DNA from: Scyliorhinus canicula
Lineage: Eukaryota
Assembly: GCF_902713615.1 (NCBI RefSeq)
Contig: NC_052162.1
Location: 47,987,990 to 48,051,989, forward strand
Reading direction: 5' to 3'
Length of the DNA: 64,000 nt
The notes beneath the pieces were generated by a model that was given only the letters and a program-made list of their open reading frames with translations, did no database searches and had not been told where the DNA came from. The first letter of the stretch is position 1. Every line of letters starts with the position of its first letter. Position numbers and translations under genes: made by a program. This document shows, piece by piece, positions 8,123 to 36,724 of the stretch.

Positions 8123-8817
8123 GAGTGAAATTCTCCGACCCCCGCAGGGTCGGGGAATCACCCGGGGCCTTCGTAAATCCCGCCCCCGCCGAGGCCAAAA
8201 TTCTCCGCCACCCGGGAATCGGCGGGGGCGGGAATCGCACCCCGCCGATTGGCGGGGGCGGGAATCGCACCCCGCCGATTGGCGGGCCCCCCGTGCCGGT
8301 CGGCGGGCCTCCCATGGCGATTCTCCGGCCTGCGATGGGCTGACGTCCCGCCGCTGTTAGGCCTCTCCCGCCGACGTGGTTTAAACCACCTCTGGTCCCC
8401 GGGGGGTGCCCCCACGGTGGCCTGGCCCGCGATCGGGCCCACCGATCGGCGGGCGGGCCTGTGCCGTGGGGGCACTCTTCTTCTTCCGCCGCCGCCACAG
8501 CCTTCACCATGGCAGAGGCAGAAGAGACCCCCTCCACCGCGCATGCACCAGTGATGACGTCAGCGGCCGCTGACGCTCCGGCACATGTGTGGACTCATGC
8601 TGACCGGCGAAGGCCTTTCGGCCAGCCCTGAAGCCGGTCGGCGGGGCGCCAAAGGCCGTTGGCACCAGTCGGCGGAGCGGGAGCCACTCCGGCGCGGTCC
8701 TAGCCGCTAAAGTTGCGGAGAATTCCACACCGTTGGGGAGGCCCGACGCCGGAGTGGTTCTCGCCACTCTGGTACGCCGGGACCCCCCGCCCCGCTGGGT
8801 AGGGGAGAATCCCGGTT
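8123..8817 (+). mobile_element. Harbinger-type MITE, ~680-bp family A
   Basis: TIRs GAGTGAAATTCTCC / GGAGAATCCCGGTT; GCG TSD. Removing it restores the host integrase frame EQTSDRCEVCK. Confidence 0.9.
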
Positions 8818-9134
8818 GCGATAGATGTGAAGTATGTAAGAACACCATCATGACCCATAGTGAGAGATTTTAATGTGAAGTTGGGGCTGTGGATCTTAAA
8901 GCGTGGGGTAAAGAAAGGAACATTTTCATTTTACACTTGGTAACTAGATTTAATCAGTTGCCGATTATATGTAGTAAAGAAAATGATTGTGGAACGGGTT
9001 CTGGAAAAATGATTATGGATCGGACTGGGGCAGGGGTGGGGAAAGTATCTGTTCAAGGTGTTAAGAACATAAGAACTAGGAGCAGGAGTAGCCCATCTGG
9101 CCCCTCGAGCCTGCTCCATCATTCAATAAGATCA

Positions 9135-10160
9135 AGGTGCGATCTTCCGGCCTCGTTACACTTGGGCTCAAGCAAAACTAGGCCGGCGAATAGCGGGAGA
9201 GGCCAAAAACGAGATCCGTGCCAGGCACCAAACAGTTTGCGATGCAACCGACCCGCTGCTGTAGGCAAAATCGGGATCTCCCCGTAGCGAGGCGAGAAAC
9301 CGTTTATCCCCACTTAAGCCTCATTTCCATCCAATTAACGAGACTGACCCCTTATCCAATGGCCTCCCGTTATTCAGCGGCCTCCCCAGCAAGTGCGCAC
9401 GCTGGCGCCGAATAGTACTCCTTGTAAAAAACGCGAACCTGGCAGAAAGGCTTCAGTGGGGAGCCGAGAGGGGAGTATCCATCATTGCTCACAGGCAAAG
9501 AGACTGGGAGTGCTGGGTTTGCCACCCCAGTGCCCGGGGGGGAGGGGGGGGGGGTTGGAAGATCCTACGTAGGGGTGGGCAGCCATGGGGGTAGGGGGGG
9601 GTAGGGGTTGCGCTGGGGGGGGGGGGGGGGTGGGGGGGGGAAGGGGGGGGGGGAAACTGATCGCTTTTTTACCCATTCCTGGGGTGATCCTTGACTCTGC
9701 CTGTCTGCCCCACTGATCACCTATACCTCCCGCACCGACTGCTGAGGCATCTGGCTGCGCAGTTGAAGGCTACTGCGGTTAGGGAATTGGCGGTCGCGGT
9801 TAAGTGTGCACTTCACAGATGCCAAGTATGTTTCCTTGGGTGGATGTACCATGTAGCATCTGGGAGTCATTGCCTCGTATCCCAATCACACCTTGATGCC
9901 TGGACGCTGTGCTTAAACACTGTGGGAGGCAACACCACACACGCAACATGCGAACTCCCAGGGGGTGGGACACAGCTCCGGGGACATGTTCAAGGCCAGA
10001 GAGTGGATGAGTGCCACTGGCGATATGCCTGGAGAGACGAGCAAAGATTCCGGGGGGTCGGCCCGTATTGCAGAAGAAAGAGACAGAGGCATCATAATGG
10101 TTGTGCAAAAAGGAGTTCAATGTGCTGTACAATATGCCACTGGGGGGGCCATTAGTGATC
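9135..10160 (+). mobile_element. Partial Harbinger copy (left arm)
   Basis: Starts AGGTGCGATCTTCCGG; collinear with 20025-20830 and 43678-44460 (shared ..AATAGCGGGAGAGG.., CAGCGGCCTCCCCAGCAAG, GCATCCCAATCA blocks). Confidence 0.75.
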
Positions 10161-10973
10161 CTCACTGTGCTTGGCCATTCTCCTCCCTCAACTCCTATCA
10201 TTCCCAACTTGCTCGGCAACAGTAAAGCTTTTTGACTTGGTGTTTTGCTTCCAAAATCACTGAACATTCAACCTCTTTTAACCCATCTCTTTCACTTCTG
10301 GTAAAAAGGTACTTATATAAGCAAACCCAGAAGACCTGAAAGTTTTCAGTCATATGTCTATCCTGACAAATAGCCACCAAGACTCATAAACAAAATTTAA
10401 ATGAAACTGAATAATTTTTACCTTTCTTAATACACAAATTGAACATTGTTCATAACACCTCCTCATAGAAAAAACATGAAAAGGCATCTTTATAAAACAT
10501 TTTCATATCCTATTAAACAATTCCTGTATCACTACCTCTATCTTAATTATACAGACTTTCATCTAGTAGTAATAATGTATTTACATCAAATATTCCAGGA
10601 TACTTGACTTCTCAATAAAAATTATACTTCAGACAAGTCCATTGTGATCACATGTTCCTCCACATTTTAGCTCTTGATAAAGCATCCGCTATGATATTAT
10701 CTCTTCCTGCTCCATGATCAATTTTCAAAGCGTGTGGTTGCAGCATTCAACTGCAATGAAATAGTCTGTGTCTTGTCATGAAATTTTGCGAAAAGGTTAG
10801 AGAAATGGTCTCTATAGAGTTGTTTGAGATGTAGATTTCAAAATGTTACAGAGCCAACACCAAACTCAAAGGTCTGTGTTTTCCTAATACCTAAATAGAA
10901 TTTTGTGAGCTACCTGTAAAATTTTGTTACAATACTCGGATGTAAGCTCCCACCTGACAGACGACTGCCCAGC

Positions 10974-11319
10974 CATAGAATCATAGAATTTACAGTGCAG
11001 AAGGAGGCCATTCGGCCCATCGAGTCTGCACCGGCCCGTGGAAAGAGCACCCTACTCAAGCCCACACCCCCACCCTATCCCTGTAACCCAGTAACCTCAC
11101 CCCACCTTTTTTGGACACTAAGAGCAATTTAGCATGGCCAATCCACCTGACCAGCACATCATCGGACTGTGGGAGGAAACTGGAGCACCCGGAGGAAACC
11201 CACGCAGACACGGGGAGAACGTTCAGACTCCGCACAGACAGTGACCCAAGCCAGGAATCGAACCTGGGACCCTGGAGCTGTGAAGCAACAGTGCTAACCA
11301 CTGTGCTATCGTGCTGCCC
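10974..11319 (-). mobile_element. HE1-type V-SINE (tRNA head, V core, CR1-like tail)
   Basis: GGGCAGCACG..TGGTTAGCACTG A box, GGTTCGATTCC B box, GGGTTTCCTCCGGGTGCTCC core. Confidence 0.9.
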
Positions 11320-12149
11320 AAAATAAAATTTAAAAGGTGAGCAGAGTCAGAGCTCGAGAATACGCAGCCGCTCCCACGCTTTCATCACGTGACCCCTCTC
11401 TCCTCCTCCCCCCACCCCTCCTGCCCAAGTGCATTGTTAAAATATCCTTAAAAATTATTTTTCAATTAATCCTCATCTGCTGGTACTTGAGGTGATCTCT
11501 ATTTCCTCTATAGCACTTTGTATATAACACTCCGGTATTGGTCCTGATTCAGACTCTGTGTAGGCTGTTTGATATGGTCCTCTCAACTCAGCATTAGCTT
11601 GTTGCATTTTTTACCAAAGAAGGTGGGCTAAACATGTCAGCTTAATTTTCCTTACCGTCCTTTTTTTGAAAATCGTGTCAGATAACTGAATTTCTACCTC
11701 ATCTCCCTTTTTCAAAGATTCTTCCTCTTCCTGTGTAATTTTATTGGCCTGAAAATCACAACACAGTCAGGAAACAATTCAGAATGTTGCTCTTGCAGGA
11801 TCTCAGTTTCTTTCGCTTCCACTGGCTGTTCCAACATCTCAGGTGAAGCTAATATTTTTGAGCCAGCCAGGTCATTCCCAAAGATAAAATCAATTCCTGT
11901 TGTTGGTGTTTTATGTACTACTCTAACTGTGACCTTTCCATTAACTAAATCATGCTCTAATCCAACTCTGTATAATGAAACCAGTTTATAGCTTCCGAAG
12001 ATACCTCCAATTAATGTTGTTTTCTCCATCTACCCCTCTGGAAGACAAATTGTATCATCAGCCAACACCAATGACTGATTTGCTCCAGTGTCGCTCAATA
12101 TATTTATTAGATTAGAAGAATAAGAGAACACCTCTCGTTTATAAACAAG

Positions 12150-12812
12150 TGCCGGGATTCTCCCCTACCTGACGGGGCAGGGGGGTCCCGGTGTGTTGGA
12201 GTGGCGTGAACTACTCAGGCGTCGGGCCGCCCCAAAGATGCGGAAGTCTCAGCACCTTTAGGAGCTAAGCCCTCACATTGAGGGGCTAGGCCCGCGACGG
12301 AGTGGTCCCCACTCCACCGGCTGGCGTGAACGGCCTTTGGCACCACGCCAGCCGGGGCCGAAAGGACTTCGCTGGCCGGTGTAAGTCCGCGCATGCGCTG
12401 GAGCGTCGGCGGCTGCTGACGTCATCCCGGCGCATGCGCAGGGGAGGGGGTCTCTTCCGCCTCCGTCATGGTGAAGACCATGGCGAAGGCGGAAGAAAAA
12501 GAGTGCCCCCACGGCACAGGCCCGCCTGCCGATCGGTGGGCCCCAATCGCGTGCCAGGCCACCGTGGGGGCACCCCCCGGCATCAGATCGCCCCGCGCCC
12601 CCCCGCAGGACCCCGGTGCCCGCCCCGCCGCCAATCCCACCAGTCAGGTAGGTGTTTTGATACCCGCCGGCGGGAGAGGCTTGTCAGCGGCGGGACTTCG
12701 CCGAATCTCGGGTTGCGGAGAATTCGGGACACGGCGGGGGCGGGATTGATGCCGGCCCAGGGCGATTCTCCGACCCGGCGGGGGAGGGGGGGGGGGTTGG
12801 AGAATCCCGCCC
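12150..12812 (-). mobile_element. Harbinger-type MITE, family A
   Basis: TIRs TGCCGGGATTCTCC / GGAGAATCCCGCCC; TSD AAG/AAA; reverse-complement homolog of 8123 and 27918. Confidence 0.88.
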
Positions 12813-13045
12813 AAAATCTTTAAACTCTTCCATAATTTGTTTCCTTAATTTACTTGACTGGTGTGAGGAATTATCTCTCTACCTCTTTAGTATAGTCTGA
12901 GCCCTCACTTTGCACTTGCACAGTGGCTACTGTTTTGTCACTTGCCTCCTTCTCCTGTTAGTTTTTCCCAAAGATTCTTTGGACGTCCCTGTTACTGCAA
13001 TAGGTGCTCCAATTAATGTCCCGCAATTACCTGTGCAAAGACCAG

Positions 13046-13720
13046 GGGCGGGATTCTCCGACACCCCGCCGGGTCGGAGAATCGCCGGGGGGCGGCATGA
13101 ATCCCTCCCCCGCAGGCTGCCGAATTCGCCGGCGCCTGGGTTTTGCCGGGGGTGGGAATCGCGCTGCGACAGTCGGCGGCAGCTAGCAGCGGCCTCTGGT
13201 GATTCTCCTGCCCATGATGGGCCGAGTGGCCGCCCATTTTTGGCGGGTCCCGCCGGCGTAAATCACAACAGGTCCTTACCAGCGGGACCTGGCTCCATGG
13301 GGAGTGCAGAGTCCTCGGTGGAGGGGGGTGTGGGGGGCGCGGGCGGATCTGTGCCCCACGGTAGCCTGGACTGCGATCAGGGCCCACTTGTCCATGGGCG
13401 GGCCTGTGCCGTGGGGGCACTGTTTCCCTCCGCACCATCCGCTGTCAACCTCCGCCATGGGTGGTGCAGAGAAGAACCCCCCTGCACATGCGGTGTGATG
13501 ACGTCAGCACACGCTGGTGCTCCCGCGCATGCGCCAACTCGCTCCGGCCGGCGGAAGCCCTTCCACGCCGGCTGGCACAGCGGCAAAAACTCCAGCACCA
13601 GCCTAGCCCCTGAAGGTGCGGAGGATTACGCACCTTCGGGGCGGCCCGACGTGGGCGTGGTTCATGCCACTCCTCGCTGCCGGAGTGGCCCGCCCCGCCG
13701 GTTCGCAGAACATCCCGCCC
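13046..13720 (+). mobile_element. Harbinger-type MITE, family A variant
   Basis: TIRs GGGCGGGATTCTCC / AGAACATCCCGCCC; CAG TSD (13043-45, 13721-23). Confidence 0.88.
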
Positions 13721-15786
13721 CAGTTTTATTGCAATAGATGCTACTTGTTTCTTCATATCACTTTTGGGATCTAGCCCATCTCCTTTATTAGTTTGGCATC
13801 CTTCTGTCTGTTCTTGAGAACTTGTATCATTTTGATCATCTGATTTACTATTCTTCTAATTTTCCTATCGATTCCCATATGACCTTTTTGCCACAAGACT
13901 GCAAGACATCGTAGGTATCCGCTAAAACTCCCACTTCTCAGACCTTTGATATGGGATGCTTATTGAAATAAGTCATGATGGTTACTGGAACGCTATTTTA
14001 GAATTCTTCCAGAATCAGCATTTCTCTCACGTTCTCAAAATTTTTTCTTTTACTTCGGTGATTGAAGCCACCAGTCCCACAACATTTATTTTTCCCCCAA
14101 CAAATTCTACTATAATTGCATACTATCTTTTCTTTTAATGTCCAAAATTTCAATTGCTTCAGGAACAAGTTCTTAAGTATTGAGTATTGCTCTTTTGATC
14201 ACTTCAGACTCTGGCGATTGTTCTTCTGACAGACCAGTGTACACATTCATTGCTCTACCTATCAGGACACTTTGTAACATGAAGGTCAAGCATCCTTTGG
14301 CCACTTGAACTTCACAGCTATTTTTCCAGACGAGGTTAAATATATTTCAGCTCCATCCTTTGTAAACTTCGACACTAAACAGAGATGTAGTAAAATCAAA
14401 ATCGTCAGTGGAATCAGAATCATCCTCTGAACCACTATCTCTCCTTTCTTCCTTTTATTCTCAGCTTTTCCCTAGCCAGTTCATGCTTTCTGCATTCTTT
14501 CTTTCTTTCAAACTTGCTCTGATGCTTTTTCATTTTGTTTTCGAAATCATGTTTTTCCATTCCCATTTATTTAGCTTTTTCTTTTTCCATTTCCTCTTTT
14601 TCTAGTTAAAGTTTTTCTTTTCCTTTTTCTATTCAAGTTGCTTCATTTGCAACTGAATTCCAGCTTACTCTAACTGTGATATGATAATTTCAGGTTTCTC
14701 TTCTTGTAATTCTAAATGCTGGGTAATTTATTTAATCATATCGTCCTTACGGCATTCTGCTTTTATTTCTACATTCAATTTATCTCCAAATTCTCTTTGT
14801 GTAGCCTGAACCAATAATTTCAAATAACCCATCGTGCCATTTTCTACTCTCATTTTGGTAACAGCTAAAGCCATTTGTGAGTTCCAACCAGAGTAACATA
14901 ATTCACAGAAAATACTATTCCTACGGCCAGTATCTCCATGTAGTCATTTCTTTAAGTATTCACTGATCTCACTTAAAATTTAAGGAATTTTGATCCCATA
15001 AGAGCTTCCACTTTTTTAGGATCCATGCTGCTGTAAATACTGGACAAGTCGGATCCCAGATTGAAACCTGACTTGACCGATACTGATTTTTTGTCAGAGC
15101 AAATTCATAGGAGTCGGCTGATGCAATTTAATATAAAGAATAAAATACTTATTGAAACAATAAAAATGAACTGTATTACACCAGGCAAAATGGTTGGAAA
15201 GATCTCAAAACAAATACAAAAGACGCTTCAAAATTCCCATCACTCCTTTACCCTAGCAATTATTTTTACAGACACACAAACCAGTGACGAGATATCATTA
15301 GCCTGACACAAAGGACCGGGGCAGTTGCACATGGTTTTCTTCTGAGGTGAATTCCTGAACGTTCACTTGATGCTTCTCAACCAACCTGTATCTTTCCCTG
15401 AGACAACAAAAAAACACACTTTAAACTCACTGTTTCTTCAATTGCAGATTCCCTCAGCTCCCTCAGTTCCCTCAGCTTAGTCTTCTAGTAGCACCACTGT
15501 TAAACCAATCACTTTGCTGAGTGCTAACTGATTATTCAGTTAATATTGTGCAATAGCCTCATAGTTTTACATCGCAGAGTGCTTAAGCCCTGTCTTCTCT
15601 CTCTGACAGGCTGACTGAACTCTCCTCACTCATCTTTGGACCAATTTTGCTTGGCAACGCTTTTCTGCTTTGCATGTTGCTTCCAAAACCACTGAACTTG
15701 CTACATCTTATAACTTATCTCGTTCCCTTCAGAGGTTGTAAGAACTCATTAAAATGCATATATACAAGCAAATACAAAAACATCTG

Positions 15787-15975
15787 GGGCTGGGTCCTCC
15801 GCCAGTGGGAATCTCCATTGCACCTGCAGCGCACCCACACGTGGGGATTTCCAGATAGCGTGGGGCTGCCCACAATGGGAAACCCCATTGGCCAACTGGT
15901 GGGACAGAAAATCCTTCTGCCGGCAGGGGTGCGCCACACCAGAAAACTGGTGCGGTGGGACAGAGAATCCCACCC
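15787..15975. mobile_element. Short (~190 bp) Harbinger-type MITE
   Basis: Ends GGGCTGGGTCCTCC / AGAGAATCCCACCC; CTG TSD (15784-86, 15976-78). Confidence 0.75.
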
Positions 15976-16327
15976 CTGAAATCGTTCAGTGACACACCGA
16001 GGCGCCAAGGTTCATAAACAAAACCTAAGTTAAACTGAAACACTTTTTGCTTCTTTAACAAACAAATAAATATAAAAATTCAATTTAAAATAATGCATCA
16101 TTACTAACACTTTTAAAAAGGAATTGAATAAACACTGGAAGGAGAAAGAATTGAAAGGATATAGTGGAAAACTGGGAGTTGCAGGATTTTTGTCCAAAAG
16201 AATCAAATTGTTCCAAGTTTAAGACTTTGCAACAACAGGCTGGTTTACTTTATGAATGAGTCCATTTAAAATATTGCCATTTTCCCAACCGTGACACAAT
16301 ATGCAATTATAAATTTGCGGTCCGCAT

Positions 16328-17884
16328 GATTGATATGGGGCAAATCACGTGGGAGCGGGCTAACCCAGATCAATAAAGAGTAAGCGAAGGGCCCTGGGAG
16401 AGCAGGGGTCTGGGCAGTGTGGACCCCGGAGCTGGACAGTCAAGACCTAACCATCATTGCCCATGCCTGTGTACAGTTGTCTTTGTCTTCTGTTAATAAA
16501 TCCCCATTGTTGTTACTGGAAGTTTCCACTGTATTGGCCCGAGCTAACACACAGAGCAATGAGATAAATGCCGTAGAATCTTTGTCATTGGAAAGCCCTC
16601 CCCCCAGCCCGAACACAACATGGGAAGGTCCCCTGGCCCCTCCCTCGCACCCCGCAACAACCACGGTGGGCAACCCCGGCCCGATCGTTTGCACGCAAAA
16701 AAAACCAGCTTAGCGCCAGGGCAGTACCCTGCCATTGCCATCTGGGCACCTTTTTAGTACCAGGATGGCACCCAGATGGCACTTCCAGGATGCCCAGATG
16801 GCACCAGCAGTGCTGCAGCACTGCTCTGCCCAAAGGGCATGCAGCGGGAGGCCTCCAATCCTCTTGGGGACCTCCATGAGTGCCAGGTGGAACGACCACC
16901 GGAGGGTCTCCCGGACGACCAGAGGCACATGAGTGGTCAGGGTAAGTGAAGGGTGCCTCCGATGTCCTCTCCCTGGAATGTGGGCACCTTGGCACCTCCA
17001 AAGTGCTTGGATTGCACTGCCAAGCTGGCAGTAGCACTGCCTGGGTGCCAGGGTGGCAGTGCAAGGTTGTCTAAATGACGCAAATGCCAAGGGCCAAGGG
17101 AGGCCATGCTCATAAAATGTGGGTGGTGGGGGTTTTAAGGGTGGGGATGTGCAGGGCAGGCAAATAGGGGCCTCCGGGAAGTTGAGGGGGTGATGGGTGG
17201 GGGTCCATTAAGGGAAGGGGGACTATAAGGGGGCTTGGGCTGGGTCTGCAGAGGAGGGACCCCATAGCGGGTGTTCTCATTTGGGATGGTGTGGGATAGT
17301 GTCCATGTGTGTAGGAGGTGACGTAGAACATAGAACATACAGTGCAGAAGGAGGCCAATTGGCCCATCGAGTCTGCACCAACCCACTTAAGCCCTCACTT
17401 CCACCATATCCCTCCTAACTTTTTTGGACACTAAGGGCAATTTATCATGGCCAATCCACCTAACCTGCACACCTTTGGACGGTGGGACGAAGCCAGAGCA
17501 CCCAGAAGAAACCCACGCAGACACGGGGAGAACGTGCAGACTCCGCACCAACAGTGACCCAGTGGGGAATCGCACCTGGGACCCTGATGCTGTGAAGCCA
17601 CAGTGATAACCACTATGCTACTGTGCTGCCCATTGCCTATAGGTGGGGATGTGATGGACCCACAAGCTCACTTAGTGATTGGGCCACCCTTTCAAAACGG
17701 CAGCCCAACCTCTGAGTTCAGCTCCCCAGTGCTAAAAAAGAAATTCTAAGTGTGGCCGAAACGGGTGAGAAACTCCCCAGGGCCCAAAAAAGTGTCATTG
17801 ATTAGCGGTGGCAGAGTAAGCAGGAAACTCCCTGAAAAACCTGCCACAAATGAACTAAAACATTTTTTGGGAGATTTGGGCCCC
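16328..17884. mobile_element. Decayed GC-rich non-autonomous DNA element containing a nested SINE
   Basis: GGGGCAAATC near the left end and GATTTGGGCCCC at the right end; reiterated GGCAC/GTGCC motifs. Boundaries are approximate. Confidence 0.4.
17323..17631 (-). mobile_element. HE1-type V-SINE
   Basis: Same head, core and tail as 10974-11319. Confidence 0.88.
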
Positions 17885-21370: not shown

Positions 21371-21379
21371 TTCGAGTCT

Positions 21380-21702
21380 CTACAGTGCAGAAGGAGGCCA
21401 TTCAGCCCATCGAGTCTGCTGACCCTTTAAAAGAGCCCAGCACTTAATCCCATATATCCATCCTCCCCCTGTAACCCCAACTAAGCTACACATCCCTGGA
21501 TGCTAAGGGACAATTTTAGCATGGCAAATCCACCTAACCTGCACATCTTTGCACTGTGGGAGGAAACTGGAGCACCTGAAGAAACCTCACACAGAAATGA
21601 GGAAAGCATGGAAACTCCACACAGTCACCCAAGGGCAGAGTTGAACCAGGGTGCCTGGTGCGGTGAGGCTGATGTGCTAACCACTGTGCAACAGTGCCAC
21701 CC
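21380..21702 (-). mobile_element. HE1-type V-SINE (older)
   Basis: Diverged copy of the same head, core and tail. Confidence 0.8.
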
Positions 21703-25270: not shown

Positions 25271-26117
25271 AGCAGGAAGAATCCACAGAAAATTGTCATA
25301 GTATCCGTTTAGAAGTTTCCCAAGACATCACCGAACCTATATACCCAAGTCAACCTGGAGGAATCAGAGAGAGAGAGAGGGAGAGTGCGAGTAATCAAAG
25401 AAGTATAGGCAGCTAGTGCTGCACCAGAAGCAGAGAAAATGCGGACCCTATTGTCCGCACGCAGAACGTGGGTGGGAGCTCATGCTTAGATTGAAGAGAT
25501 CAAGTTCATGAGGATTAGTGGGAGGCCTGAAGATTCACATAACTTCAGCTAAAGAGAAGGAATCTTCAGAAATAATCTAACCCTCAAAATGAAAGTAATT
25601 CCTGCGATTTAACGTACCCAGTTGGGAAAAGAAAAAGGAAGCAGGCTCTCAAGAAACGATAATAGCTTTGAACTGGTTCCTGGAGAAAAAAATGAATAAA
25701 GATAATTAAAGGGACAGTGTAAAGTATAACCGTGGTGAGAGATATTTAGTAGTTTCAAATGTTAAATTGACAAAAGTTTTAGTATTTAAGTTGCCTACAA
25801 AAATTGTGTTTAGTCAATTCTGACTTTTGTTTGTTACAGTAGAAGTCTTATAACTTGAAATCCTGACGTCATCCTTTCAGTTGGTCACTGGAAATTAAAA
25901 TTTAGTTTCAAAGTTAACAGTCTGTATGAGACTTTCAAATGGATATCAGGTAATTGAGCTATGGTTCTTGAAATTTATCATAAAATATAGTGACAATATA
26001 ATTTCCTATTTCATTGTATGAACACTGAAGAAAACAAATATTGCATCAGAGTGGAGCAAGGAAGATCCCCATTCCAGCTTCCCACTTAACAATGCACAGA
26101 AACCAAATATACCTGCT

Positions 26118-26255
26118 TGTCAGCTTTGACAAAGAGCCATCGGACTCGAAACATTAGCTCTTTTCTCTTCCTACACATGCTGTCAGACCTGCTGAGATTT
26201 TCCAGCATTTTCTCTTTTGTTTCAGACTCCAGCATCCGCAGTAACTTGCTTTTAT
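26118..26255 (+). mobile_element. Penelope terminal repeat with degenerate hammerhead motif
   Basis: TTGACAA-A-GAG-CCATCGGA-CTC-GAAACATTAG followed by the ..CAGACCTGCTGAG..CCAGCATTTTC.. block also seen at 4140-4230, 30990-31060 and 36010-36070. Confidence 0.6.
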
Positions 26256-27917
26256 ACTTTCTTGTTATTGCATAAACAGTAATTTGCATGCTTTCATTAT
26301 TTTTGAGTCATTTAGCGGATTGAAGAAGAATTTTTTGTTTGCTTGAAGAAAGAGCTGTCTGACAGCATCCATACCTCCCTCCTGAACATACGTCCGGGGT
26401 CTAATTTACCTTCTATCCCATTTCTCTCTGGCACCTTACCACTTCAGGTCAATAACTCGTTCCTTCCAGCTCAAGTGAGAAGGACTATTGACAGCAGCTA
26501 AAATTAGTCTGCAAAGGGCTTCAGCTGCAAGTTCGAGTGATTAACTGCACTGATCAATGGAGGTACTTGTCATGGGCCTATTGCTTCTGTGAGATCACTG
26601 GCAAAGATCCAGAAATCACCATTTTGGGTAGAGTCACCCTCTTCATTGCATAGAGATCAGCATGTCAATGCACCCAGCAACCACCAATGGTCATTATTTC
26701 CAGGTTGTTCAATGCCGAGTTACCGGCAGTTAACCTATGATTGAAAGTCCTGCTCTTTATCAGGGAGGCACACCCGTAAAAATAATGACTCCCATTTAAA
26801 TGTATTGTAAAAAAAAAATACTGGATGTAACAGTGGGAGAAAATTTGACAATTATTTATCTACCAAAATGTCATATACCTCTATACAGCATTCTGACAAA
26901 AGTAATGCATTGCATGATTTACCATTCTGTACTTTTGAGGTCCCAAGATGCCAGAACTTGGATTACCATTCAGTAACCATTCAATAATTCACATGGTAGA
27001 CATCCTAATACAGTGTCTGTGGCCCATCACGACCGAATGTGCTCCAATGCCAAGGCGTCAGAATTTGTAAGAACACAAATTTGAATCTGGAAATTCATTG
27101 AGGTTTTAATCTGGTACTTTGGATTGAAATGGATGCTTGGGGCTAGATTTTCCTTTCAACACAGGGCTGAAATATGTAGGCGCTTAAAAATAGCGCTCAT
27201 TTCTGGTGCCTGTAATTTCCATCGGTGTGGAAAATGGGACAGATTGGGAGCATACATGTTGCTGTCCCGATGTTGACGGCTGAAGTGAGCATTTCTGAAC
27301 TTCTGCAATTTTGATGGAAGTGGGTGGGTTTTGATAGATGAAGTAAATTGCTCCAGCAAACAGTTGTTATGAAACATGATTTGGAGATGGGAACTGTTTG
27401 AAAAGTCAATACAAAAGGTCTTGCTTACTACATGAAATTATAGCATAATCCATATCAGTTTTAACTACAGTGATATTAGTGATTTGATTTTAAAGGATTA
27501 AGTGACCACTAAATAAGGTGGTTTCCACATTGTTACTTTCAACAACTGGCAAGCTGTCAAGGGAAAGAACACCATTGTAAAAAAGGAAAAGCCTGGATCA
27601 AGTGTTTTAAAAGGATAGCCCAGTTTGAAATCCAGGTCTGATTGTGTGAAGTGAACCCATGGTATTGAATTTTTTCTTGCCGTTCAGCTAAGCCATTTCA
27701 GTTTGGCCATTTCAGAGCTTTGATAGAAGTCTGAATTTTTGACTGTCTCGGCTCTGAAGGGTTTGTTTCCATAGGTATCAGGGGAATCTGAGGGCTTGTT
27801 TATTTTGACAGATCTATGAGCTTCTATTTTTTGAGTGGCTCTCATGTAATGCTTATTTGTTTTGATAGATTCATGAGCTTTTCAAAGATTTCTAAATTTT
27901 ATTACATGACTCACAAG

Positions 27918-28618
27918 GGGCGAAATTCTCCGACCCCCAGCAGTGTCGGAGAATCGCCTGGGGCCGCCGAAAATCCCACCCCCGCCGTGGCAGAGATTCT
28001 CCGCCACCTGGGAATTGGCGGGGGTGGGAATCACGCCACTCCGATCGGCGAGGCCCCTGCGGCGATTCTCCGGCCCGCGATGGGCCGAAGTCCCGCCGCT
28101 GGGAGGCCTCTCCCGCCGCCGAGGTTTGAACCACCTCTGGTGGCAGCGGGATCGGAGCCGCGACCGGGCCCCGGGGTCCTGGGGGGGGCGCGGGGCGATC
28201 GGACCCCGGGGGGTGCCCCCACGGTGGCCAGGCCCGCGATCGGGGCCCCCCACTCAGACTCCGGGCCAGTTCCCTGGGTGCACTCTTTCTCCTCCGCCAC
28301 CGCCACGGTGGAAGCGGAAGAGAAACGCACATCGCGCATGCGCCGGTGGTGGCGGCAGCTGGCCGCTGACGTCACCGCCGGCGCATGCGCCGACCGGCGA
28401 AAGCCTTTCGGCCAGACCCGCTGCCGGGCGGCGGGCCTGAAAGGCCGCTGGCGCTGGTTTTTTGCGCCAGTCTTCTGGTGCCAACCGCTCCAGCGCGGGG
28501 CTAGCCCCCAAAGGTGCGGAGAATTCCCCACCTTTGGGGAGGCCTGACCCCGGAGTGGTTGGCGCCACTCCCCTACGCCGTGACCCCCCGTCACGCCGGG
28601 TAGGGGAGAATCCCACCC
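27918..28618 (+). mobile_element. Harbinger-type MITE, family A
   Basis: TIRs GGGCGAAATTCTCC / GGAGAATCCCACCC; AAG TSD (27915-17, 28619-21). Confidence 0.9.
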
Positions 28619-28639
28619 AAGGTCTGATTCTAGTGGTTA

Positions 28640-29015
28640 CTGGATGAATGGATTGGGATGGTGAAGGGGTTGGGGGTATTGAAAAATGGTGAGAGAAGTT
28701 GAAGAGGGTCTGGATTGTTGGAGTAAGGGAATTGAGGGAAGTATGTGGGGGTAAGTGGGTTTGAAGGAGGTATGAAGGAAGGTTAATGGGGTTGGAAGCG
28801 GATTAATATGGTTTGAAAGGACTTAAGGAATCTGAAACAGTAAGGGAGTTTTAAGGGGGTACGGAATTTTGAATGGGGTTGGAGGTTTAAAGGGATTTAA
28901 ATGGGGTTTGAACAGGATTATGGCGATTTGAAAGGGCAAGGGGTTAAAGAGGGTTAAGGGGCTCAAAGGGATTTTGGGGTCAGGGAGCTGAAGGCTGGGG
29001 TAAGATGGGGGATGT
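28640..29015 (+). repeat. G/A-skewed low-complexity region
   Basis: Degenerate GGGGTT/GAAGG reiterations, almost devoid of C. Confidence 0.6.
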
Positions 29016-29999
29016 GGGTCAGGAAAGCCTCACACTGATTTGCGAAACTAGACTGATGTCTCTGGGAACAGAAGTAGACCTTTTATCCTGGCCACCTTGG
29101 CATTGGCCTCCATCTCCACCTCAGAGTTGCTGCCGAAGTGCTCACCTTTTCTGGATGAAATCCTGCTGGCTGACATTCTCCTGTTCGGAGGCAGGATCGT
29201 GACGTCTGGAAATTTCATCACTCCCGATCCCTGCCCCAAATACCTGGATGTTGGTGAGGAGTTTTGATCGGTCCTGTTGATTAGGCAGAACTTGAACACC
29301 TGCTCTAGGTTTGCACCTCAGACATAAGCTGAAGAAATATGGCATTATTGGACATGCTCTACTTTGGAATGAGGCATTGAAACAATGTGCCACTTGGATG
29401 TAAATAGATTCAAGAGTAGACAGATTCCCATCATTATTCCCAGATAGGGTTGCCAGGGTTTACATAAATGGTTAGTGGCATCTTAAACAGTCTGAACCAA
29501 CCAGCAACACGGGATCCTGCTAACGTAGCATGCCTTTATTCGTCAAGCACAATGTAAACTATAACATGCTGTGATTAGGGTCTCCTGAAGAAATTTCCAG
29601 CAGGATGGTTACACATTGGAATCTCATAGTGATATGTACTGGCATAGTATCCTTTAGGAGCCTAGAAACAGGAGTAGGCCATTCAGCCCCTTGAGCCTGT
29701 ATCGTCATTCAATGACATCACTGCTGTTCTGTGACCTAACTCCATACACATGCCTTTGGCCCAAATCCCTTAATATTTTTGCTCAACAATAATCCGATTT
29801 TAAATTACCAACTGATCCAGCTTCAACTGCATTTGTGGGAGAGAGTTCCAAACCTCTACTACCCTTTGAGTGAAGAAGTTCTTCCTAACAACTCTCTTGA
29901 ACTGTCTAGCCCTGTTGAGGATCTGGGATCTAGTGCCAAGGCACCCCTGCTGTGGCCAGCAGTGCATGTGCAGGGCGGGGTCCCCTAGCACAACCAGTT

Positions 30000-30942
30000 C
30001 ATTGGCACCCTGAGAGATGGCAGGGAACTTAAGGGTGGGGGAGGCTCGGGGGTTCTGAGGGTCCCGGGGGAAGCCATAACTGGTTGTTGGTTTATCACTT
30101 TCTCTAATTCGTGACAGATATCCCATTATGGATGGTATTGTGGACCCCACAGCAGCTGTCTTTGCGATGCTGTTGGCAATCCAGACGCCCAAACATCAGA
30201 AAAGGCGACTGCAGCAGCGTCGACAGAGGCCCGAGGCAGCAGCCCATGTGCAGGGATCCACCCCATACCCTGAAGACCTGGCCGCCCATCAGGCCAAGGA
30301 GGGACCAAGAGGGCGAGGCCGGCATTGGCCCAAGGTGTACAGGCACCACTGGTCATTTGAAGAGATGTCGGACAGCATGTGCCGCAGGAGGCTCCGCCTC
30401 AACAAGGGGACAGTGTGGCACCGATGCCATGTCCTTGCGTACATGGAATGCATGGAGGAGGAGGCTACCTCCTTCTGGTGGCATCAAGGACATCCCAGCC
30501 CTGAACCGTTACACCTCAGGTTCATTCCAGGGCTCAAGCAAAAACCAACAGCCCACAAAAGCATCCATGACGCCCAGCCAGCTGACTATATAAATGGATC
30601 AAGGTGCCCGGCAGTAGGACTCCCCGCTATTGCCGGGATGTCACAGGTCCAGGGGGTAATAGACGGCACGCATGTCTTGGAGTGCCCTTCATTAACAGGA
30701 AGGGTTTCCACTCCCTGAACATTCAACTAGTGTGCGACCACAACCTCAAGACCATGCTTGTGTGCACATGCTTCCCAGGGAGTGTGCATCCCCAGCTGCT
30801 TTGAGGGGCACCACCAGTTGGCTCTTGGGTAATAAGGAGTATCTGTTTAGGTTCTGGCTAATGATGCCTGTACAGAGGCTGGTGACTGATGCGGAGACCC
30901 GATATAATGAGGCCCATGTGGCCATCTAGGCTGCCATTGAGA
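30000..30942 (+). mobile_element. Harbinger transposase fragment (pseudogene)
   Basis: [53 protein letters not shown]; frameshifted. Confidence 0.85.
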
Positions 30943-31239
30943 AAAGCGAGTTCATGTTTCGAGTCCACATGCCTCTTCCTCAGCGCTCTCTTTTCTCTCC
31001 AAGACTTGCTGAGTTTTCCCTGCATTTTCTCTTTTTGTTTCAGATTCTAGCATCCGCAGACGTTTGTTTTTTTTTCTGCAATTGCCTGTTTTGTCATCCA
31101 TTTTTAAATATGGGAACAATCTACTGGAACCTCTACTGTCTACTGACTTCCCACAGTAAGCCCTTCAGATATAGTAGCAGAATTAAGCCATTCGACCTAT
31201 CAAGTCTGCTCCACCATTCGATAATGGCTGATTTTATTT

Positions 31240-32608
31240 AGAACATAGAACCTAGAACATTACAGCGCAGTACGGGCCCTTCGGCCCTCGATGTTGCGCC
31301 GACCTGTGAAACCACCTGAAGCCTATCTGACCTACACTATTCCATTTTCATCCATATGTCTATCCAGTGACCACTTAAATGCCCTTAAATTTGGCGAGTC
31401 TACTACTGTTGCAGGCAGGGCGTTCCACACCCCTACTACTCTCTGAGTAAAGAAACTGCCTCTGACATCTGTCCTATATCTACCACCCCTCAATTTAAAG
31501 CTATGTCCCCTTGTGTTGGTCATCACCATCCGAGGAAAGAGACTCTCACTGTCCACCCTATCTAACCCTCTGACTATCTTATATGTCTCTATTAAATCAC
31601 CTCTCAGCCTTCTCCTCTCTAACGAAAACAACCTCAAGTCCCTGAGCCTTTCCTCGTAAGACCTTCCCTCCATACCAGGCAACATCCTAGTAAATCTCCT
31701 CTGAACCCTTTCCAAAGCTTCCACATCCTTCCTATAATGTGGTGACCAGAACTGCACGCAGTACTCCAGGAGCGGCCGCCCCAGAGTTATGTACAGCTGC
31801 AGCATGACCTTGTGGCTCCGAAACTCAATCCCCCTACTGATAAAGGCTAGCACACCATATGCCTTCTTAACAGCCCTATTAACCTGGCTGGCAACTTTCA
31901 GGGATTTATGTACCTGGATGCCGAGATCTCTCTGTTCATTTACACTACCAAGAATCTTGCCATTAGCCCAGTACTCTGCATTCCTGTTACTCCTTCCAAA
32001 GTGAACCACCTCACACTTTTCCGCAGTAAACTCCATCTGCCACCTCTCAGCCCAGCTCTGCAGCTTATCTATGTCCCTCTGTATCCTATAACATCCTTCA
32101 GCACTATCCACAACTCCACCGACCTTCGTGTCATCTGCAAATTTACTAACCCATCCTTCTACACCCTCTTCCAGGTCATTTATAAAAATGAAAAACAGCA
32201 GTGGCCCCAAAACAGATCCTTGCCGTACACCACTAGTAACTGAACTCCAGGATGAACATTTGTCATCAACCACCACCCTCTGTCTTCTTTCAGCTAGCCA
32301 ATTACTGATCCAAACCGCTAAATCACCTTCAATCCCATACTTCCTTATTTTCTGCAATAGCCTACCGTGGGGAACCTTATCAAACGCCTTACTGAAATCC
32401 ATATACACCACATCAACCACTTTACCCTGATCCACCTGTTTGGTCACCTTCTCAAAAAACTCAATAAGGTTTGTGAGGCATGACCTACCCTTCACAAAAC
32501 CGTGTTGACTATCGCTAATCAACTTGTTCTTTTCAAGATGATTATAAACCCTATCTCTTATAACCTTTTCCAACATTTTACCCACAACCGAAGTAAGGCT
32601 CACAGGTC
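31240..32608 (-). mobile_element. Young 5'-truncated CR1 LINE with an uninterrupted RT frame
   Basis: PVSLTSVVGK..QHGFVKGRSCLTNL..DFSKAFDKV..QGSVLGPLLF..KFADDTK, open to the stop at 31332; (TTCTATG)-like tail at 31240-31260. The first ~28 aa of the 453-aa ORF come from the flanking older CR1. Confidence 0.95.
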
Positions 32609-34020
32609 CCCATTCTCCTGCCTTCTCCCCATAACCCTCTAACTCTGTCTTAAATACACTCAGTGACTTGGCATCCACAGCCTTCTGCGGCAAAGAGTTC
32701 TACAGATTCACCACCCTCTGGCAAAAAAAATTCCTCTTCATCTCTGTTTAAAGGGTCGTCCCTTCAGTCTGAGGTCATGACCTCGGGTTCTAGTCTCTCC
32801 TACTAGTGGAAACATCTTCTCCACGTCCGCTCTATGTAGGCCTCTCAGTATTCTGTAAGTTTCAGTGAGATCCCCCTTATCCTTCTGAACTCCACCGAGT
32901 ACAGACCCAGAGTTCTCAACCACTCCTCATATGACAAACCCTTGATTCCCGAGATGATTCTTGTGAACCTCCTCTGGGCCCCGTCCAAGGCCAGCGCATC
33001 CTTAGATACAGGGCTCAAAACTGCTCACAATATTCCAAATGGGGTCTGACCAGAGCCCTATACAGCCTCAGTAGTACATCCATGTCCTTGTGTTCTAGCC
33101 CTCTTGAAATGAATGCTAGCATTGCACTTGTCTTCCTAACTACCAACTGAACCTGCATGTTAACCCTAATCAAATCCTGAACTCGGACCAAGTCCCTTTG
33201 AGCTTCTGATTTCCTAAGCATTTCCCCATTTAGAAAATAGTTTATGCCTAACTCCCTCCTTCCAAAGTGCATAACCTCACACTTTTCCATATTGCAATTC
33301 CATCTGCCACTGTTTTGCCCACTCTCCTGAAAAAGACACCTTTATCCCCACTCTCTGCCTTCTGCCAGTCAGCCAATCCTCTATCCATGCCAGTACCTTG
33401 CCCCTAATTGATTGTGGAAGGATCAACCAGGGCAGTTGACGTGTTACATTAAACCTAGGCCCCCACCATTCCTCAAACCTATTCATATCATATCCAGCTA
33501 ATCTCCAATCTAACGTGGTGTATCTTCACCACGTCATGTACTTTTTGTCTTAGAGCCCATTCTGCTATCTCTTTCCTGGTGAATGGGATAGGTCGCACAG
33601 GGAAGCTGGTGTAGTCGGCAGGATAGTTAAATATAGTCAATATTCTCAGCATGCTTCTAAATTGGTAACTCATCAACTTCCCTTCCACATTGATGGAGTC
33701 CTATCATGTTTGGTAGCTTCCTGGACTGCACCTTGTCAAAAGGCCTTCACGAAATCCAAGTAGATCACGTTCACTGGCTTTCCTTTGTCTTTTTCTCCCC
33801 ATTACCTCCACAAAGAATTCTAACAGATTTGTCAGCCATGGCCTCACCTTGACGAAGCCGTGCTGACCTATTTTACCATGCCCTACCAAGTACTCCGCAA
33901 TCTCATCCTTAATAATGGACTCTAAAATCTTACCAACGACCAAAGCAAGGATAACAAGCCTATAATTTCTGGTCTTCTGCCTCCCTCACTTCTTAAACAG
34001 AGGTGTTACATTAGCCATAA
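32609..34020 (-). mobile_element. Older CR1 LINE (host of the young CR1; its 3' end lies at ~31165-31239)
   Basis: EKCEVMHFG, LYRALVRPHLEYC, VVGKILESIIKD motifs with frameshifts. Confidence 0.85.
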
Positions 34021-34560
34021 CTGGAAGCCTCTTCTGATTGCAGGCATGACCAACGTCTCCGTTGAATATGGCAGCCAGTCAGTAAATTGCCACTGGTTGT
34101 TGTACATAGGAGCAGCCTAAGCCTGTTGGGAGGTGACTGGCTCCAGCACCTTCATTTAGACTGGTAGAGGGTTTACCAAATGCAACCACATGGACCCAAA
34201 GGCATATTGGCCAGATTTACGACTGTATTCAAGGCATGTTTGGGGACCACCAGGAGGACCCCCCCCCCCCCCCCCCCCCCCCCCTTCACACAGACGTTCC
34301 ATATGCTTTGTTTCCAAAGGTAAATGCGGAATTGGACTGCATGAAGAATCTGGGGATCATAAGACCAGTACAATTTTCTGAATTGGTGGGGTCAGTCGAA
34401 CCAGTCGAAGCCTAATAGGGCAGTGTGTCTCTGCCGGGATTATGACAGTAAACCGGGTATCCAGTTCCCAGGATTGAGGGTCTGTGTGCCACGTTTAGCA
34501 GTTAGATATGCGCCATGAGTATCTCCAGCTGGAGATACAGAAGATTTGTCACCATCAATT
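34020..34560 (+). mobile_element. Gypsy pol (RT) remnant
   Basis: GIIRPVQFSE..CLCRDY..TVNRVS..LDMRHEYLQLEI..FVTIN, read across frameshifts. Confidence 0.6.
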
Positions 34561-34950
34561 CTGTTTCATGCATTATTTCAAAAATACCATTTTCCGTTGT
34601 GGGAAATTCATTGCATAATAATATCTCAAACCAGACCGATAACGCCAATTAACCATTTCTCACGTAGGTTCAGGCGCTTACAGTGCGAGACTTAATTTTT
34701 ATCTCCAGATCTCAATTTGACTAAAAGTACGTTATCTTCAGACCGTCTATCAACAACTCTATCTTTGTACTGGGATCTGCATTTAATATTTTGTCCATCT
34801 CTGAATTTTGCCACCATGGAATCCTCCATCATTTGCTTCACTGTAAGTTGTCTGTATTTATAGGAAAGAGGCTGGAAATAACTGTCTTCCTAAAAGTTTT
34901 TTTAGAGCAGCGGCTCCATGGCCCAACAGATAGCCTTTGTCATGAAATAA

Positions 34951-35289
34951 GGGCGGCGCAGTGGCCCAGTGGTTAGCATTGCTGCCTCAGAGCACCAGGG
35001 ACCCTGGTTCAATTCTGGCATTGGGTCATTATCTGTGTGGAGTTTGTGCATTCTCCCTGTGTCTGCCGGGGTTTCCTCCGGGTGCTCCGGTTTCCTTCCA
35101 CATTCCAAAGATGTGTATGTTGGATGGATTGGCTGTACTAAATTGACCCTAAGTATCCAAAAAGATGTGCAGATTCAGGGGTTAATGGTATAGGGCGGGG
35201 GAGTAATCTTGGGTGAAGTACTCTTTCAGAGGGTCGGTGCAGACTCGAAGGGCCGAATGGCCACCTCCTGCACTGTAGGGATTCTATGA
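34951..35289 (+). mobile_element. HE1-type V-SINE
   Basis: GGGCGGCGCAGTGG..GGTTCAATTC..GGGTTTCCTCCGGGTGCTCCGGTTTCC..GGGCCGAATGGCC..ATTCTATG. Confidence 0.88.
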
Positions 35290-35451
35290 GACAGAATTCA
35301 TTTCCACTTAGAAAGATATCTATTCTATGAGAAATTGAATCCAGTCAAAACTAAAAATCTATTGTTCTGAGAAATGTATACATAGTCATTTGAAAGCAGA
35401 CTTTCAATACAGATTTCGAGATTTAAAGATTAACGTTTTTCAGTCTCTTGG

Positions 35452-35702
35452 AATCATAGAAATTACAGTGCAGAAGGAGGCCATTCGGCCTATCGAGTCT
35501 GCATCTGCCCTTGAAAAGAGCACCCGACTTACGCCCACGCTTCTACCCTATCCCCATAACCCAACCTAAACTTTTGGACACGAAGGAACAATTTATCATG
35601 GCCAATCCACCTTACCTGCACGTCTTTGGGCTGTGGGAGGAACCCGGAGCACCCGGAGGAAACCCATGCAGACACGGGGAGAAAGTGCAAACTCCAAGGT
35701 CA
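35452..35702 (-). mobile_element. HE1-type V-SINE, 5'-truncated
   Basis: Core and tail; inverted relative to 34951-35289. Confidence 0.85.
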
Positions 35703-36073
35703 CCCGGCTATGAATATAGCCTTGATCACCCATTTCCTGGGTCTGTTTATGGCATGTTTAGCCAGGCCCAGGAGCTGGTTCATGAGGATGTCCTCCTCCT
35801 TCCATCCCCCTTTCCACACCCTGAGTGTCCCCATTTACAGGTGTATCAATACCCATCATTTGTTTAGCAATGCAATTGCTTTAACAATGTAATTTCCATT
35901 AAATCTTTGCAATGTATTAACCATTTAACAAACGATTACTAGTGGACTCTGACAATGTAATTAAAAATACCTTGATACCCACACATTTTCAGTCAGAGAT
36001 AAGCATACAAGCAAAAAAGAAGTACTCAACAGGTCTGACAGCATCTGTGGAGAGAGAAAAAAACAGACTTAAT

Positions 36074-36724
36074 GGCCGGGATTCTCTCCTACCCGGCGGG
36101 GCGGAGGGTCCCGGCGTAGCGGAGTGGCGCCAACCACTCTGGCATCGGGCCTCGCCAAACATGCCGACTGGTGCCAAAACCGGTGCCAACGGCCTTTGAT
36201 GCCCGCCGGCCGGCGTCGGGGCTGGCCGAAAGGCCTTCGCCGGTTCGCGCATGCGCCGGTGCGTCAGCGCCCGCTGACGTCACCACCGGCGCATGCGCGG
36301 TAGGGGGGTCTCTTCCGCCTCCGCCATGGTGGAGGCCTTAGCGGCGGCAGAAGAAAAAGAGTGCCCCCATGGCACAGGCCCGCCCGCCGATCGGTGGGCC
36401 CCGATCGCAGGCCAAGCCACCGTGGGGGCATCCCCTGGGGTCCGATCGCCCCGCGCCCCAGGACCTCGGGGGCCCGCTCGCGCCACCAATTCCGCCGCCA
36501 CCAGAGGTGGTTGAAACGACGTTGGCGGGAGAGGCCTGTCAGCGGCGGGACTTCGGCCCATCGCGGGCTGGAAAATCGCCGCGGGGGGCCCGCCGATCGG
36601 CACGGCGCGATTCCCGCTCCCGCCGATTCCCGGGTGGCGGAGAATTCCGGCCACGGCGTGGGCGGGATTTACGCCGGCTTTGGGCGATTCTCCGACCCTG
36701 CGGGGGGGTCAGAGAATTCCGCCC
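36074..36724 (-). mobile_element. Harbinger-type MITE, family A, inserted into a Penelope end
   Basis: TIRs GGCCGGGATTCTCT / AGAGAATTCCGCCC; AAT TSD (36071-73, 36725-27). Confidence 0.9.

What the first reader, a model, noticed from the sequence alone, without database searches (positions are those of the whole stretch)
8123..36724. A MITE family distributes an NRF1-CRE-NRF1 motif cassette upstream of the NLGN3 coding exon
Seen: all five family-A MITEs (8123, 12150, 13046, 27918, 36074) have a central quasi-palindrome with a full TGACGTCA flanked by two GCGCATGCGC(-like) sites. An example is 36247-36299 (CGCGCATGCGC..CTGACGTCA..GGCGCATGCGC); others lie at ~12388-12440, ~28333-28391, ~8538-8590 and ~13483-13534. 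The elements are also very CpG-rich. Known: GCGCATGCGC is the NRF1 site and TGACGTCA the CREB/ATF CRE, both typical of CpG-island promoters and both methylation-sensitive. Inference: these MITEs may be mobile mini CpG-island promoters or enhancers that escape methylation and could wire a neuronal gene to CREB.
Basis: partly seen in the sequence, partly recalled or inferred. Interest (0 to 1): 0.72.

Follow-up and report, generated by a model that had tools for sequence, protein, structure and literature searches.

The report
Shark jumping gene carrying promoter-type motifs
Five decaying copies of a very abundant small cut-and-paste transposon lie upstream of the first coding exon of a neuroligin-3 gene, each carrying an inherited palindrome of NRF1 and CRE promoter motifs, but nothing here shows that these copies regulate the gene.

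Summary
Five copies (651-701 bp, 66-80% alike) of one element have 13-base inverted ends (GGSCGGRATTCTC) and 3-base target duplications. Each carries a central cassette with TGACGTCA and GCGCATGCGC-type sites, far above chance.

Corrections:
- The palindrome centres on GCGGCCGC, not on the CRE.
- Its ancestral form was NRF1-CRE-centre-CRE-NRF1.
- Two copies have lost NRF1 sites, mostly through CpG transitions.

The family is not specific to NLGN3:
- Its summed depth in DNA contigs is about 10^3-10^4 times that of the unique flanks.
- It also occurs, cassette included, in a second species.
- This scan has already flagged the same cassette in more than ten other pieces of this genome.

Among the five copies the motif letters are better kept (6% mismatches) than the spacers (14%) or the rest (20%). 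Another internal block is kept equally well, and genome-wide depth gives the cassette no advantage. CpGs decay about as fast as in a control SINE. Two RNA runs show no reads in the unique flanks and no start sites.

Best reading: a promoter-type module of the transposon lineage itself, carried passively into each insertion. NLGN3 wiring is unsupported. No autonomous partner was found, and methylation and factor binding could not be tested.

The parts
8123..8817 (-). Family-A copy c8123. TSD GCG/GCG. Cassette 8539-8590, with intact CRE at 8555-8562. Both NRF1 sites are decayed, all by CpG transitions. Carries a 30-bp tandem duplication at 8221-8286.
12150..12812 (+). Family-A copy c12150. TSD AAG/AAA. 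Cassette 12389-12439, with both NRF1 10-mers and the CRE exact. Has an internal deletion near the 3' end.
13046..13720 (-). Family-A copy c13046, the most diverged (27% at non-CpG sites). TSD CAG/CAG. Cassette 13484-13534, with one NRF1 site exact, one with 2 mismatches, and the CRE exact.
27918..28618 (-). Family-A copy c27918. TSD AAG/AAG. Cassette 28334-28390, with both NRF1 sites exact. The full CRE is kept in the other arm than in the four other copies.
36074..36724 (+). Family-A copy c36074, the closest to the consensus. TSD AAT/AAT. Cassette 36247-36298 has 16-nt perfectly complementary arms. It lacks about 60 bp that the other copies have near the 5' end.
6862..7468 (-). Distant relative with the same inverted ends. 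TSD AGA/AGA. Aligns to consensus positions 363-634 at 64% identity and has no NRF1/CRE cassette.
38189..38821 (+). Different MITE family with the same inverted ends. It has two NRF1-type sites as a direct repeat (about 38372-38385 and 38406-38417) and no CRE.
41162..41566 (+). Coding exon for the N-terminus of a neuroligin (COesterase fold), closest to NLGN3. All five copies lie 4.4-33 kb upstream of it.

Best explanation
These are five old, independently inserted, decaying copies of a very abundant non-autonomous cut-and-paste DNA transposon. The element is 650-700 bp long, about 70% G+C, with 13-bp inverted ends GGSCGGRATTCTC and a 3-bp target duplication. It is probably moved by a Harbinger-like (PHIS) transposase.

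The motif cassette is part of the family's ancestral sequence. It is a 52-56 bp palindrome, NRF1 - CRE - GCGGCCGC - CRE - NRF1, so it arrives ready-made with every insertion.

Inferred, not shown: the cassette is a promoter-type module that served the transposon lineage itself. It could be a relic of the autonomous parent's germline promoter, or a landing pad for two ubiquitous, methylation-sensitive factors (NRF1 and CREB/ATF) that keeps new copies open and mobilisable. That would explain why the motif letters are kept across subfamilies. After insertion the copies decay much like other repeats. The copies upstream of NLGN3 are most likely inert passengers.
For: Shown:
- Inverted ends, with exact 3-bp target duplications in 4 of 5 copies plus one relative.
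- No coding capacity and no Rfam match.
- Summed contig depth of 25,000-840,000 in the element against 3-70 in the unique flanks, with the family and its cassette also present in a second species.
- The cassette is in all five copies and in the genome-wide majority.
- Motif positions show 8/140 mismatches, against 17/120 in cassette spacers (p=0.03) and 654/3260 elsewhere (p=3e-6). The cassette window ranks 10th of 656.
- The copies fall into subtypes (different CRE arm, different indels) that all keep the motifs.
- NRF1-type pairs recur in two other repeats of the window.
- Short palindromes in general are not enriched over dinucleotide shuffles, so the motifs are not a by-product of a palindrome-rich body.

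From the literature: NRF1 binds and activates unmethylated IAP and L1 promoters in the mouse male germline (PMC12420836).
Against: - A MITE needs no promoter, and no autonomous element with these ends was found in the window or through protein searches.
- A relative with the same ends lacks the cassette, so it is not needed for transposition.
- Consensus block 337-420 is kept as well as the cassette. Genome-wide contig depth in the cassette bin is only about 0.6 of its neighbours. Six of the 15 listed joints delete or replace part of the cassette. Palindromes can break k-mer contigs, so the depth comparison is uncertain.
- Conservation rests on five related copies and on motifs that were picked because they stood out.
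- No transcription start was seen.
Confidence: 0.55

Rival explanations
1. The copies act as mobile, methylation-resistant CpG-island promoters or enhancers for the host, and those upstream of the exon connect NLGN3 to CREB signalling.
For: Each copy meets CpG-island sequence criteria. Three of five keep all three motifs. Copy 36074 has only 1 well-supported difference from the family majority in the 128 bp around the cassette, against about 7 expected, and only a 1.7x CpG excess among its private transitions. MITE-derived enhancers exist in Xenopus (PMC12676858).
Against: The family is spread across the genome, not around NLGN3. NRF1 sites in two copies were destroyed by CpG transitions. CpG decay is like that of a control SINE. 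There were no RNA reads in the flanks and no start sites. In Xenopus only 21 of 3,521 Harbinger-MITE copies overlapped an open region, so the prior for any given copy is below 1%.
Confidence: 0.08
2. The palindrome matters as DNA structure (a hairpin or cruciform that helps transposition or arose by inverted duplication), and its likeness to transcription-factor sites is incidental.
For: The cassette folds as a strong DNA hairpin in three copies (z -7.6, -4.0, -5.1). The arms are perfectly complementary over 16 nt in c36074. Both motifs are palindromes themselves.
Against: The hairpin is lost in two copies without compensating changes. The spacer letters of the arms vary more than the motif letters. 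A family with the same ends carries two NRF1-type sites as a direct repeat, which forms no hairpin. Chance occurrence of these exact 10- and 8-mers in a 650-bp sequence of this composition is about 0.004 each (own calculation from base frequencies).
Confidence: 0.15
3. The cassette has no function at any level. It is an ancestral accident of the founding copy, and it looks conserved only because the copies share ancestry and the region happens to mutate less.
For: There are only five related copies. The motifs were chosen after the fact. CpG retention in motifs (84%) is not significantly above the rest (71%, p=0.18). Another block is equally conserved. There is no depth advantage genome-wide.
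Against: Four sites of the two classic CpG-island promoter motifs within 52 bp are hard to get by accident. NRF1 pairs recur in other repeats of the window. The motif versus spacer difference has p=0.03.
Confidence: 0.2

Closest known systems
Tourist-like / Harbinger-type MITEs (PHIS superfamily), e.g. Harbinger-N12A_XT of Xenopus tropicalis (PMC12676858)
   Same: Short, non-coding and high-copy. Inverted ends starting with GG. 3-bp target duplication. Internal palindromic repeats. Clusters of transcription-factor sites.
   Different: The target duplications here are AAT, CAG, AAG, GCG and AGA. This is not the TWA of PIF/Harbinger, nor any single PHIS pattern (ANT, CWG, TNA; PMC4482050). The element is about 70% G+C and CpG-island-like. 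No autonomous partner was found. The Xenopus elements have ATAC-seq support, which is lacking here.
NRF1-driven retrotransposon promoters (IAP and L1 in the mouse germline, PMC12420836)
   Same: A mobile element carries sites for a methylation-sensitive factor, NRF1, that can activate it when unmethylated.
   Different: Those are promoters of autonomous retrotransposons with shown binding and genetics. This is a non-coding DNA transposon, and binding and activity are untested.
Transposon-borne amplification of transcription-factor sites (for example E2F sites in Brassica MITEs; recalled from memory, not checked here)
   Same: A MITE family multiplies a ready-made binding-site cluster across the genome.
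   Different: Different factor, different kingdom, and no expression data here.

Membership tests
MITE (non-autonomous TIR DNA transposon) | Terminal inverted repeats | tested here: met
   A 13-bp GGSCGGRATTCTC at both ends of all five copies, with 0-2 mismatches at nine of the ten ends and 5 at the decayed low-coordinate end of c8123. 25 matches in the window against 3.8 expected.
MITE (non-autonomous TIR DNA transposon) | Target-site duplication flanking each copy | tested here: met
   3-bp duplications are exact in 4 of 5 copies and 2/3 in the fifth. They are also exact in the relative at 6862-7468.
MITE (non-autonomous TIR DNA transposon) | Small size, no coding capacity, high copy number | tested here: met
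   Length 651-701 bp. ORFs have no Pfam family and no protein relatives. The frame after the Kozak-like ATG is not kept. Summed contig depth is 10^3-10^4 times that of the unique flanks.
PIF/Harbinger (PHIS) superfamily | 3-bp target duplication | tested here: met
PIF/Harbinger (PHIS) superfamily | TWA target preference (or the ANT, CWG, TNA preferences of other PHIS groups, PMC4482050) | tested here: not met
   AAT, CAG, AAG, GCG and AGA fit no single pattern.
PIF/Harbinger (PHIS) superfamily | Autonomous partner with a DDE_Tnp_4 transposase and the same inverted ends | tested here: inconclusive
   The degraded Harbinger at 43678-47299 has a DDE_Tnp_4 hit and TSD ATT/ATT. Its ends, GGWCRSRATCTA, match the MITE ends at only 9 of 13 positions. 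Nothing with the MITE's ends exceeds MITE size in the window. Protein searches to reach other loci found nothing.
CpG island | Sequence criteria (length, G+C, CpG observed/expected) | tested here: met
   GC 0.69-0.72, o/e 0.81-1.02, over 650 bp. A simple scan calls every copy an island.
CpG island | Unmethylated in germline and soma | not testable with these tools
   The only proxy is CpG decay: a 2.4x excess over non-CpG C/G transitions against 2.8x in a SINE control, and 1.7x for c36074 against the family majority. Inconclusive.
NRF1/CREB-bound promoter or enhancer | Consensus sites present | tested here: met
NRF1/CREB-bound promoter or enhancer | Transcription starts, or expression of the flanks, from the element | tested here: inconclusive
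   Zero reads in the unique flanks and no start pile-up at the cassette in two oligo-dT RNA runs of unknown tissue. Family-wide reads are few and on both strands.
NRF1/CREB-bound promoter or enhancer | Factor occupancy and open chromatin | not testable with these tools
   No ChIP, CUT&RUN or ATAC data were within reach.

The most novel reading that the evidence does not exclude
Thousands of copies of this MITE act as mobile, self-protecting CpG islands. NRF1 and CREB/ATF binding would keep young copies unmethylated, seeding orphan promoters or enhancers across a heavily methylated shark genome, with a few (possibly near NLGN3) co-opted by the host.
Probability: 0.1. Interest if true: 0.75.

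Novelty: new member of a known kind. Interest (0 to 1): 0.33.

Why it matters
A family this abundant that looks like a CpG island will be called as islands or candidate promoters by standard genome annotation. In this window every strong CGI-like segment is a repeat. Knowing this prevents false regulatory calls around genes such as NLGN3.

If young copies proved to be unmethylated and bound by NRF1 and CREB, the family would be a natural experiment on whether binding sites alone can create CpG islands in a vertebrate. That would also tell how DNA transposons evade silencing. As it stands, this is an ordinary case of a transposon carrying factor sites, and this scan had already noted it many times on other DNA of the same genome.

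Tried and rejected
- Fetching more copies through spurious ORF proteins: the 243-aa ORF across c27918 had no relatives.
- Reaching an autonomous partner through the Harbinger transposase N-terminal ORF at 30128-30718: no relatives within the tool's length window.
- A known RNA family or SINE origin: no Rfam match in the window.
- The element as a chain of palindromes that would yield such motifs by itself: perfect self-complementary 6-, 8- and 10-mers are not enriched over dinucleotide shuffles in the five copies (p 0.09-0.9, with one exception, the 8-mers of c27918 at p=0.02).
- A coding origin of the region after the cassette (Kozak-like ATG): the frame is broken among copies and there are no Pfam hits.
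- Literature: no paper was found that pairs GCGCATGCGC with transposons, or that describes Harbinger MITEs in sharks.
- A search of earlier findings by sequence gave nothing.
- The organism is coded in the tools.
Full report
**1. Observation**

TGACGTCA occurs six times in the window against 0.37 expected. GCGCATGCGC with at most one mismatch occurs eleven times against 0.57 expected. Self-comparison and alignment show five copies of one repeat, 66-80% identical in pairs.

Each copy ends in the 13-base inverted repeat GGSCGGRATTCTC and is flanked by a 3-base duplication. These are GCG, AAG/AAA, CAG, AAG and AAT. The refined coordinates are:
- 8123-8817 (-)
- 12150-12812 (+)
- 13046-13720 (-)
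- 27918-28618 (-)
- 36074-36724 (+)

The exon at about 41162-41566 encodes the N-terminus of a neuroligin, closest to NLGN3. The copies therefore lie 4.4-33 kb upstream of it, in both orientations.

**2. Anatomy of the cassette**

In element orientation the cassette reads NRF1 site, short spacer, CGTCAGC, GGCC, GCTGACG, spacer, NRF1 site. At 36270 the genome-wide majority letter is G, which makes the centre GCGGCCGC. Copy c27918 keeps the full CRE in the left arm. The other four keep it in the right arm and share a 3-base loss in the left. The ancestor was thus a 52-56 bp palindrome with two NRF1 and two CRE sites.

Three copies keep both NRF1 10-mers exact. In c8123 and c13046 the sites are damaged, mostly by CpG to TpG/CpA changes. 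The cassette folds into a strong DNA hairpin in three copies (z -7.6, -4.0, -5.1) and not in the two damaged ones.

Perfect short palindromes in general are not more frequent than in dinucleotide shuffles. The motifs are therefore not a side effect of a palindrome-rich body.

**3. What the element is**

- It has no coding capacity and no Rfam match.
- Three further elements share the same ends. 6862-7468 aligns to consensus 363-634 at 64% and lacks the cassette. 38189-38821 has two NRF1-type sites in direct orientation. A short one lies near 15786-15975.
- A degraded Harbinger (DDE_Tnp_4 hit) lies at 43678-47299. Its ends are GGWCRSRATCTA and its duplication is ATT. It is similar in style to the MITE but not the same.
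- The 3-base duplication fits the PHIS (Harbinger) superfamily. The duplicated triplets fit none of its known target patterns (PMC4482050).

I therefore file it as a MITE and only tentatively as Harbinger-like.

**4. Abundance and spread**

I laid the contigs of a DNA run of the same species on 35800-37000 at 80% likeness. Summed depth was 25,000-840,000 across the element against 3-70 in the unique flanks. This is not a copy number, but the excess is 10^3-10^4-fold.

A run of a second species gave 8,204 pieces with the same majority letters, including at least 90 contigs across the cassette centre. Earlier notes of this scan describe the same NRF1/CRE MITE cassette in more than ten other pieces of this genome. 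The cassette near NLGN3 is therefore background, not a local feature.

**5. Are the motifs kept better than their surroundings?**

Among the five copies the picture is modestly positive:
- Motif positions show 8 mismatches in 140 cells (5.7%).
- Cassette spacers show 17/120 (14%, p=0.03).
- The rest of the element shows 654/3260 (20%, gaps counted, p=3e-6).
- The 52-bp cassette window ranks 10th of 656, and the single motifs rank in the top tenth.
- Copy 36074 has one well-supported difference from the family majority in the 128 bp around the cassette, where about seven would be expected from the 35 rows listed. A further 176 rows were hidden.

Against a special status:
- Consensus block 337-420 is kept as well or better, and it has the highest depth genome-wide.
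- The cassette bin has about 0.6 of the depth of its neighbours in both species.
- Six of the fifteen listed joints delete or replace cassette sequence.
- Palindromes can break k-mer contigs, so the depth argument is weak in both directions.
- Five related copies, and motifs chosen because they stood out, limit the statistics.

**6. Methylation proxy**

The copies are CpG-island-like (GC 0.69-0.72, o/e 0.81-1.02). The window outside CGI-like repeats has o/e 0.31.

Against a five-copy consensus of 106 CpGs:
- 45-81% of CpGs are intact per copy.
- 107 of 165 losses are TpG/CpA.
- The per-site rate is 2.4 times that of non-CpG C/G transitions.
- A seven-copy SINE family in the same window gives 2.8 times.

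Against the genome-wide majority, c36074 has 23 private C>T/G>A changes, 12 of them at CpG, a 1.7-fold excess. CpGs inside the motifs are 84% intact against 71% elsewhere (p=0.18).

There is thus no clear sign of protection. The high CpG content is mostly inherited from a CpG-rich founder. The low ratios in both families suggest the method underestimates CpG hypermutability, so the test is inconclusive rather than negative.

**7. Expression**

Two raw-read oligo-dT RNA runs gave zero reads in the unique flanks of c36074. Family-wide depth across the element was 1-65 per bin, and no start pile-up appeared at the cassette.

One oddity remains unexplained. Reads lie mostly on '-' left of about 36456 and mostly on '+' right of it, in both runs. 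The flip is about 170 bp away from the cassette. It may come from a few expressed loci.

**8. Explanation**

The structural part is well supported: a high-copy MITE whose founder already carried the palindrome. For the mechanism I commit, at moderate confidence, to a module that served the transposon lineage. The reasons are:
- NRF1 and CREB/ATF are ubiquitous, germline-active and methylation-sensitive.
- NRF1 activates unmethylated IAP and L1 in mouse germ cells (PMC12420836).
- The cassette is followed in the consensus by a pyrimidine run, a Kozak-like ATG and an ETS-like CGGAAG.
- NRF1-type pairs recur in two other repeats here.
- The motif letters are kept across subtypes.

The cassette could be a relic of the parent's promoter or a device that keeps copies accessible. 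Which of the two is open, because no autonomous partner could be found.

Host co-option at NLGN3 has no support. In Xenopus only 21 of 3,521 Harbinger-MITE copies overlapped an open region (PMC12676858).

**9. Novelty and verdict**

Transposons that spread transcription-factor sites are a known kind. I found no paper on this family or on NRF1/CRE MITEs in cartilaginous fish. One study did not detect Harbinger elements in elephant shark at all (PMC9179366).

The finding is a new member of a known kind. It was observed correctly and over-interpreted with respect to NLGN3, and this scan had already noted it repeatedly on other DNA of the same genome. Interest is moderate to low unless methylation and binding data show that young copies are unmethylated islands.

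Noticed in passing
window 54881-58802: Satellite array of a 41-bp unit, 96 copies, 91% matches.
   Followed up: no
window 5052-5104: An unrelated repeat, preceded by an A-rich stretch, holds an inverted pair of NRF1-type sites (ACTGCGCATGCG) next to GCGGCCGC. With 38189-38821, this is a third repeat in the window carrying paired NRF1 sites.
   Followed up: partly
window 43678-47299 and 30010-30941: Degraded Harbinger element (DDE_Tnp_4 hit, frameshifts, TSD ATT/ATT, ends GGWCRSRATCTA) and a partial second copy about 66% identical to it.
   Followed up: partly
window 36087-36701 (reads): Family-wide RNA reads change strand preference at about 36456, with '-' reads to the left and '+' reads to the right, in two independent runs. 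The flip is not centred on the cassette. Cause unknown.
   Followed up: no
window 36300-36360: Directly after the cassette the family consensus has a pyrimidine run (CTCTTCC), a Kozak-like CCGCCATGG and an ETS-like CGGAAG. The reading frame is not kept among copies.
   Followed up: partly
window 25864-25871: The only TGACGTCA outside the repeat family sits in unique AT-rich DNA about 15 kb upstream of the neuroligin exon. It may be chance (0.37 expected per window).
   Followed up: no
window 10974-11320, 17324-17632, 21381-21697, 34951-35289, 35451-35695, 53272-53615, 61315-61467: Seven copies of a SINE of about 330 bp whose consensus ends in a tRNA-like segment. Used here as the CpG-decay control.
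   Followed up: partly
window 31332-32693 (-): A 453-aa ORF with a reverse-transcriptase domain (RVT_1, E 2e-31). Related LINE-like fragments lie at 32638-33328 and 61721-62418.
   Followed up: no
window 8221-8286: Perfect 30-bp tandem duplication (2.2 copies) of a subterminal inverted-end-like motif inside copy c8123.
   Followed up: no
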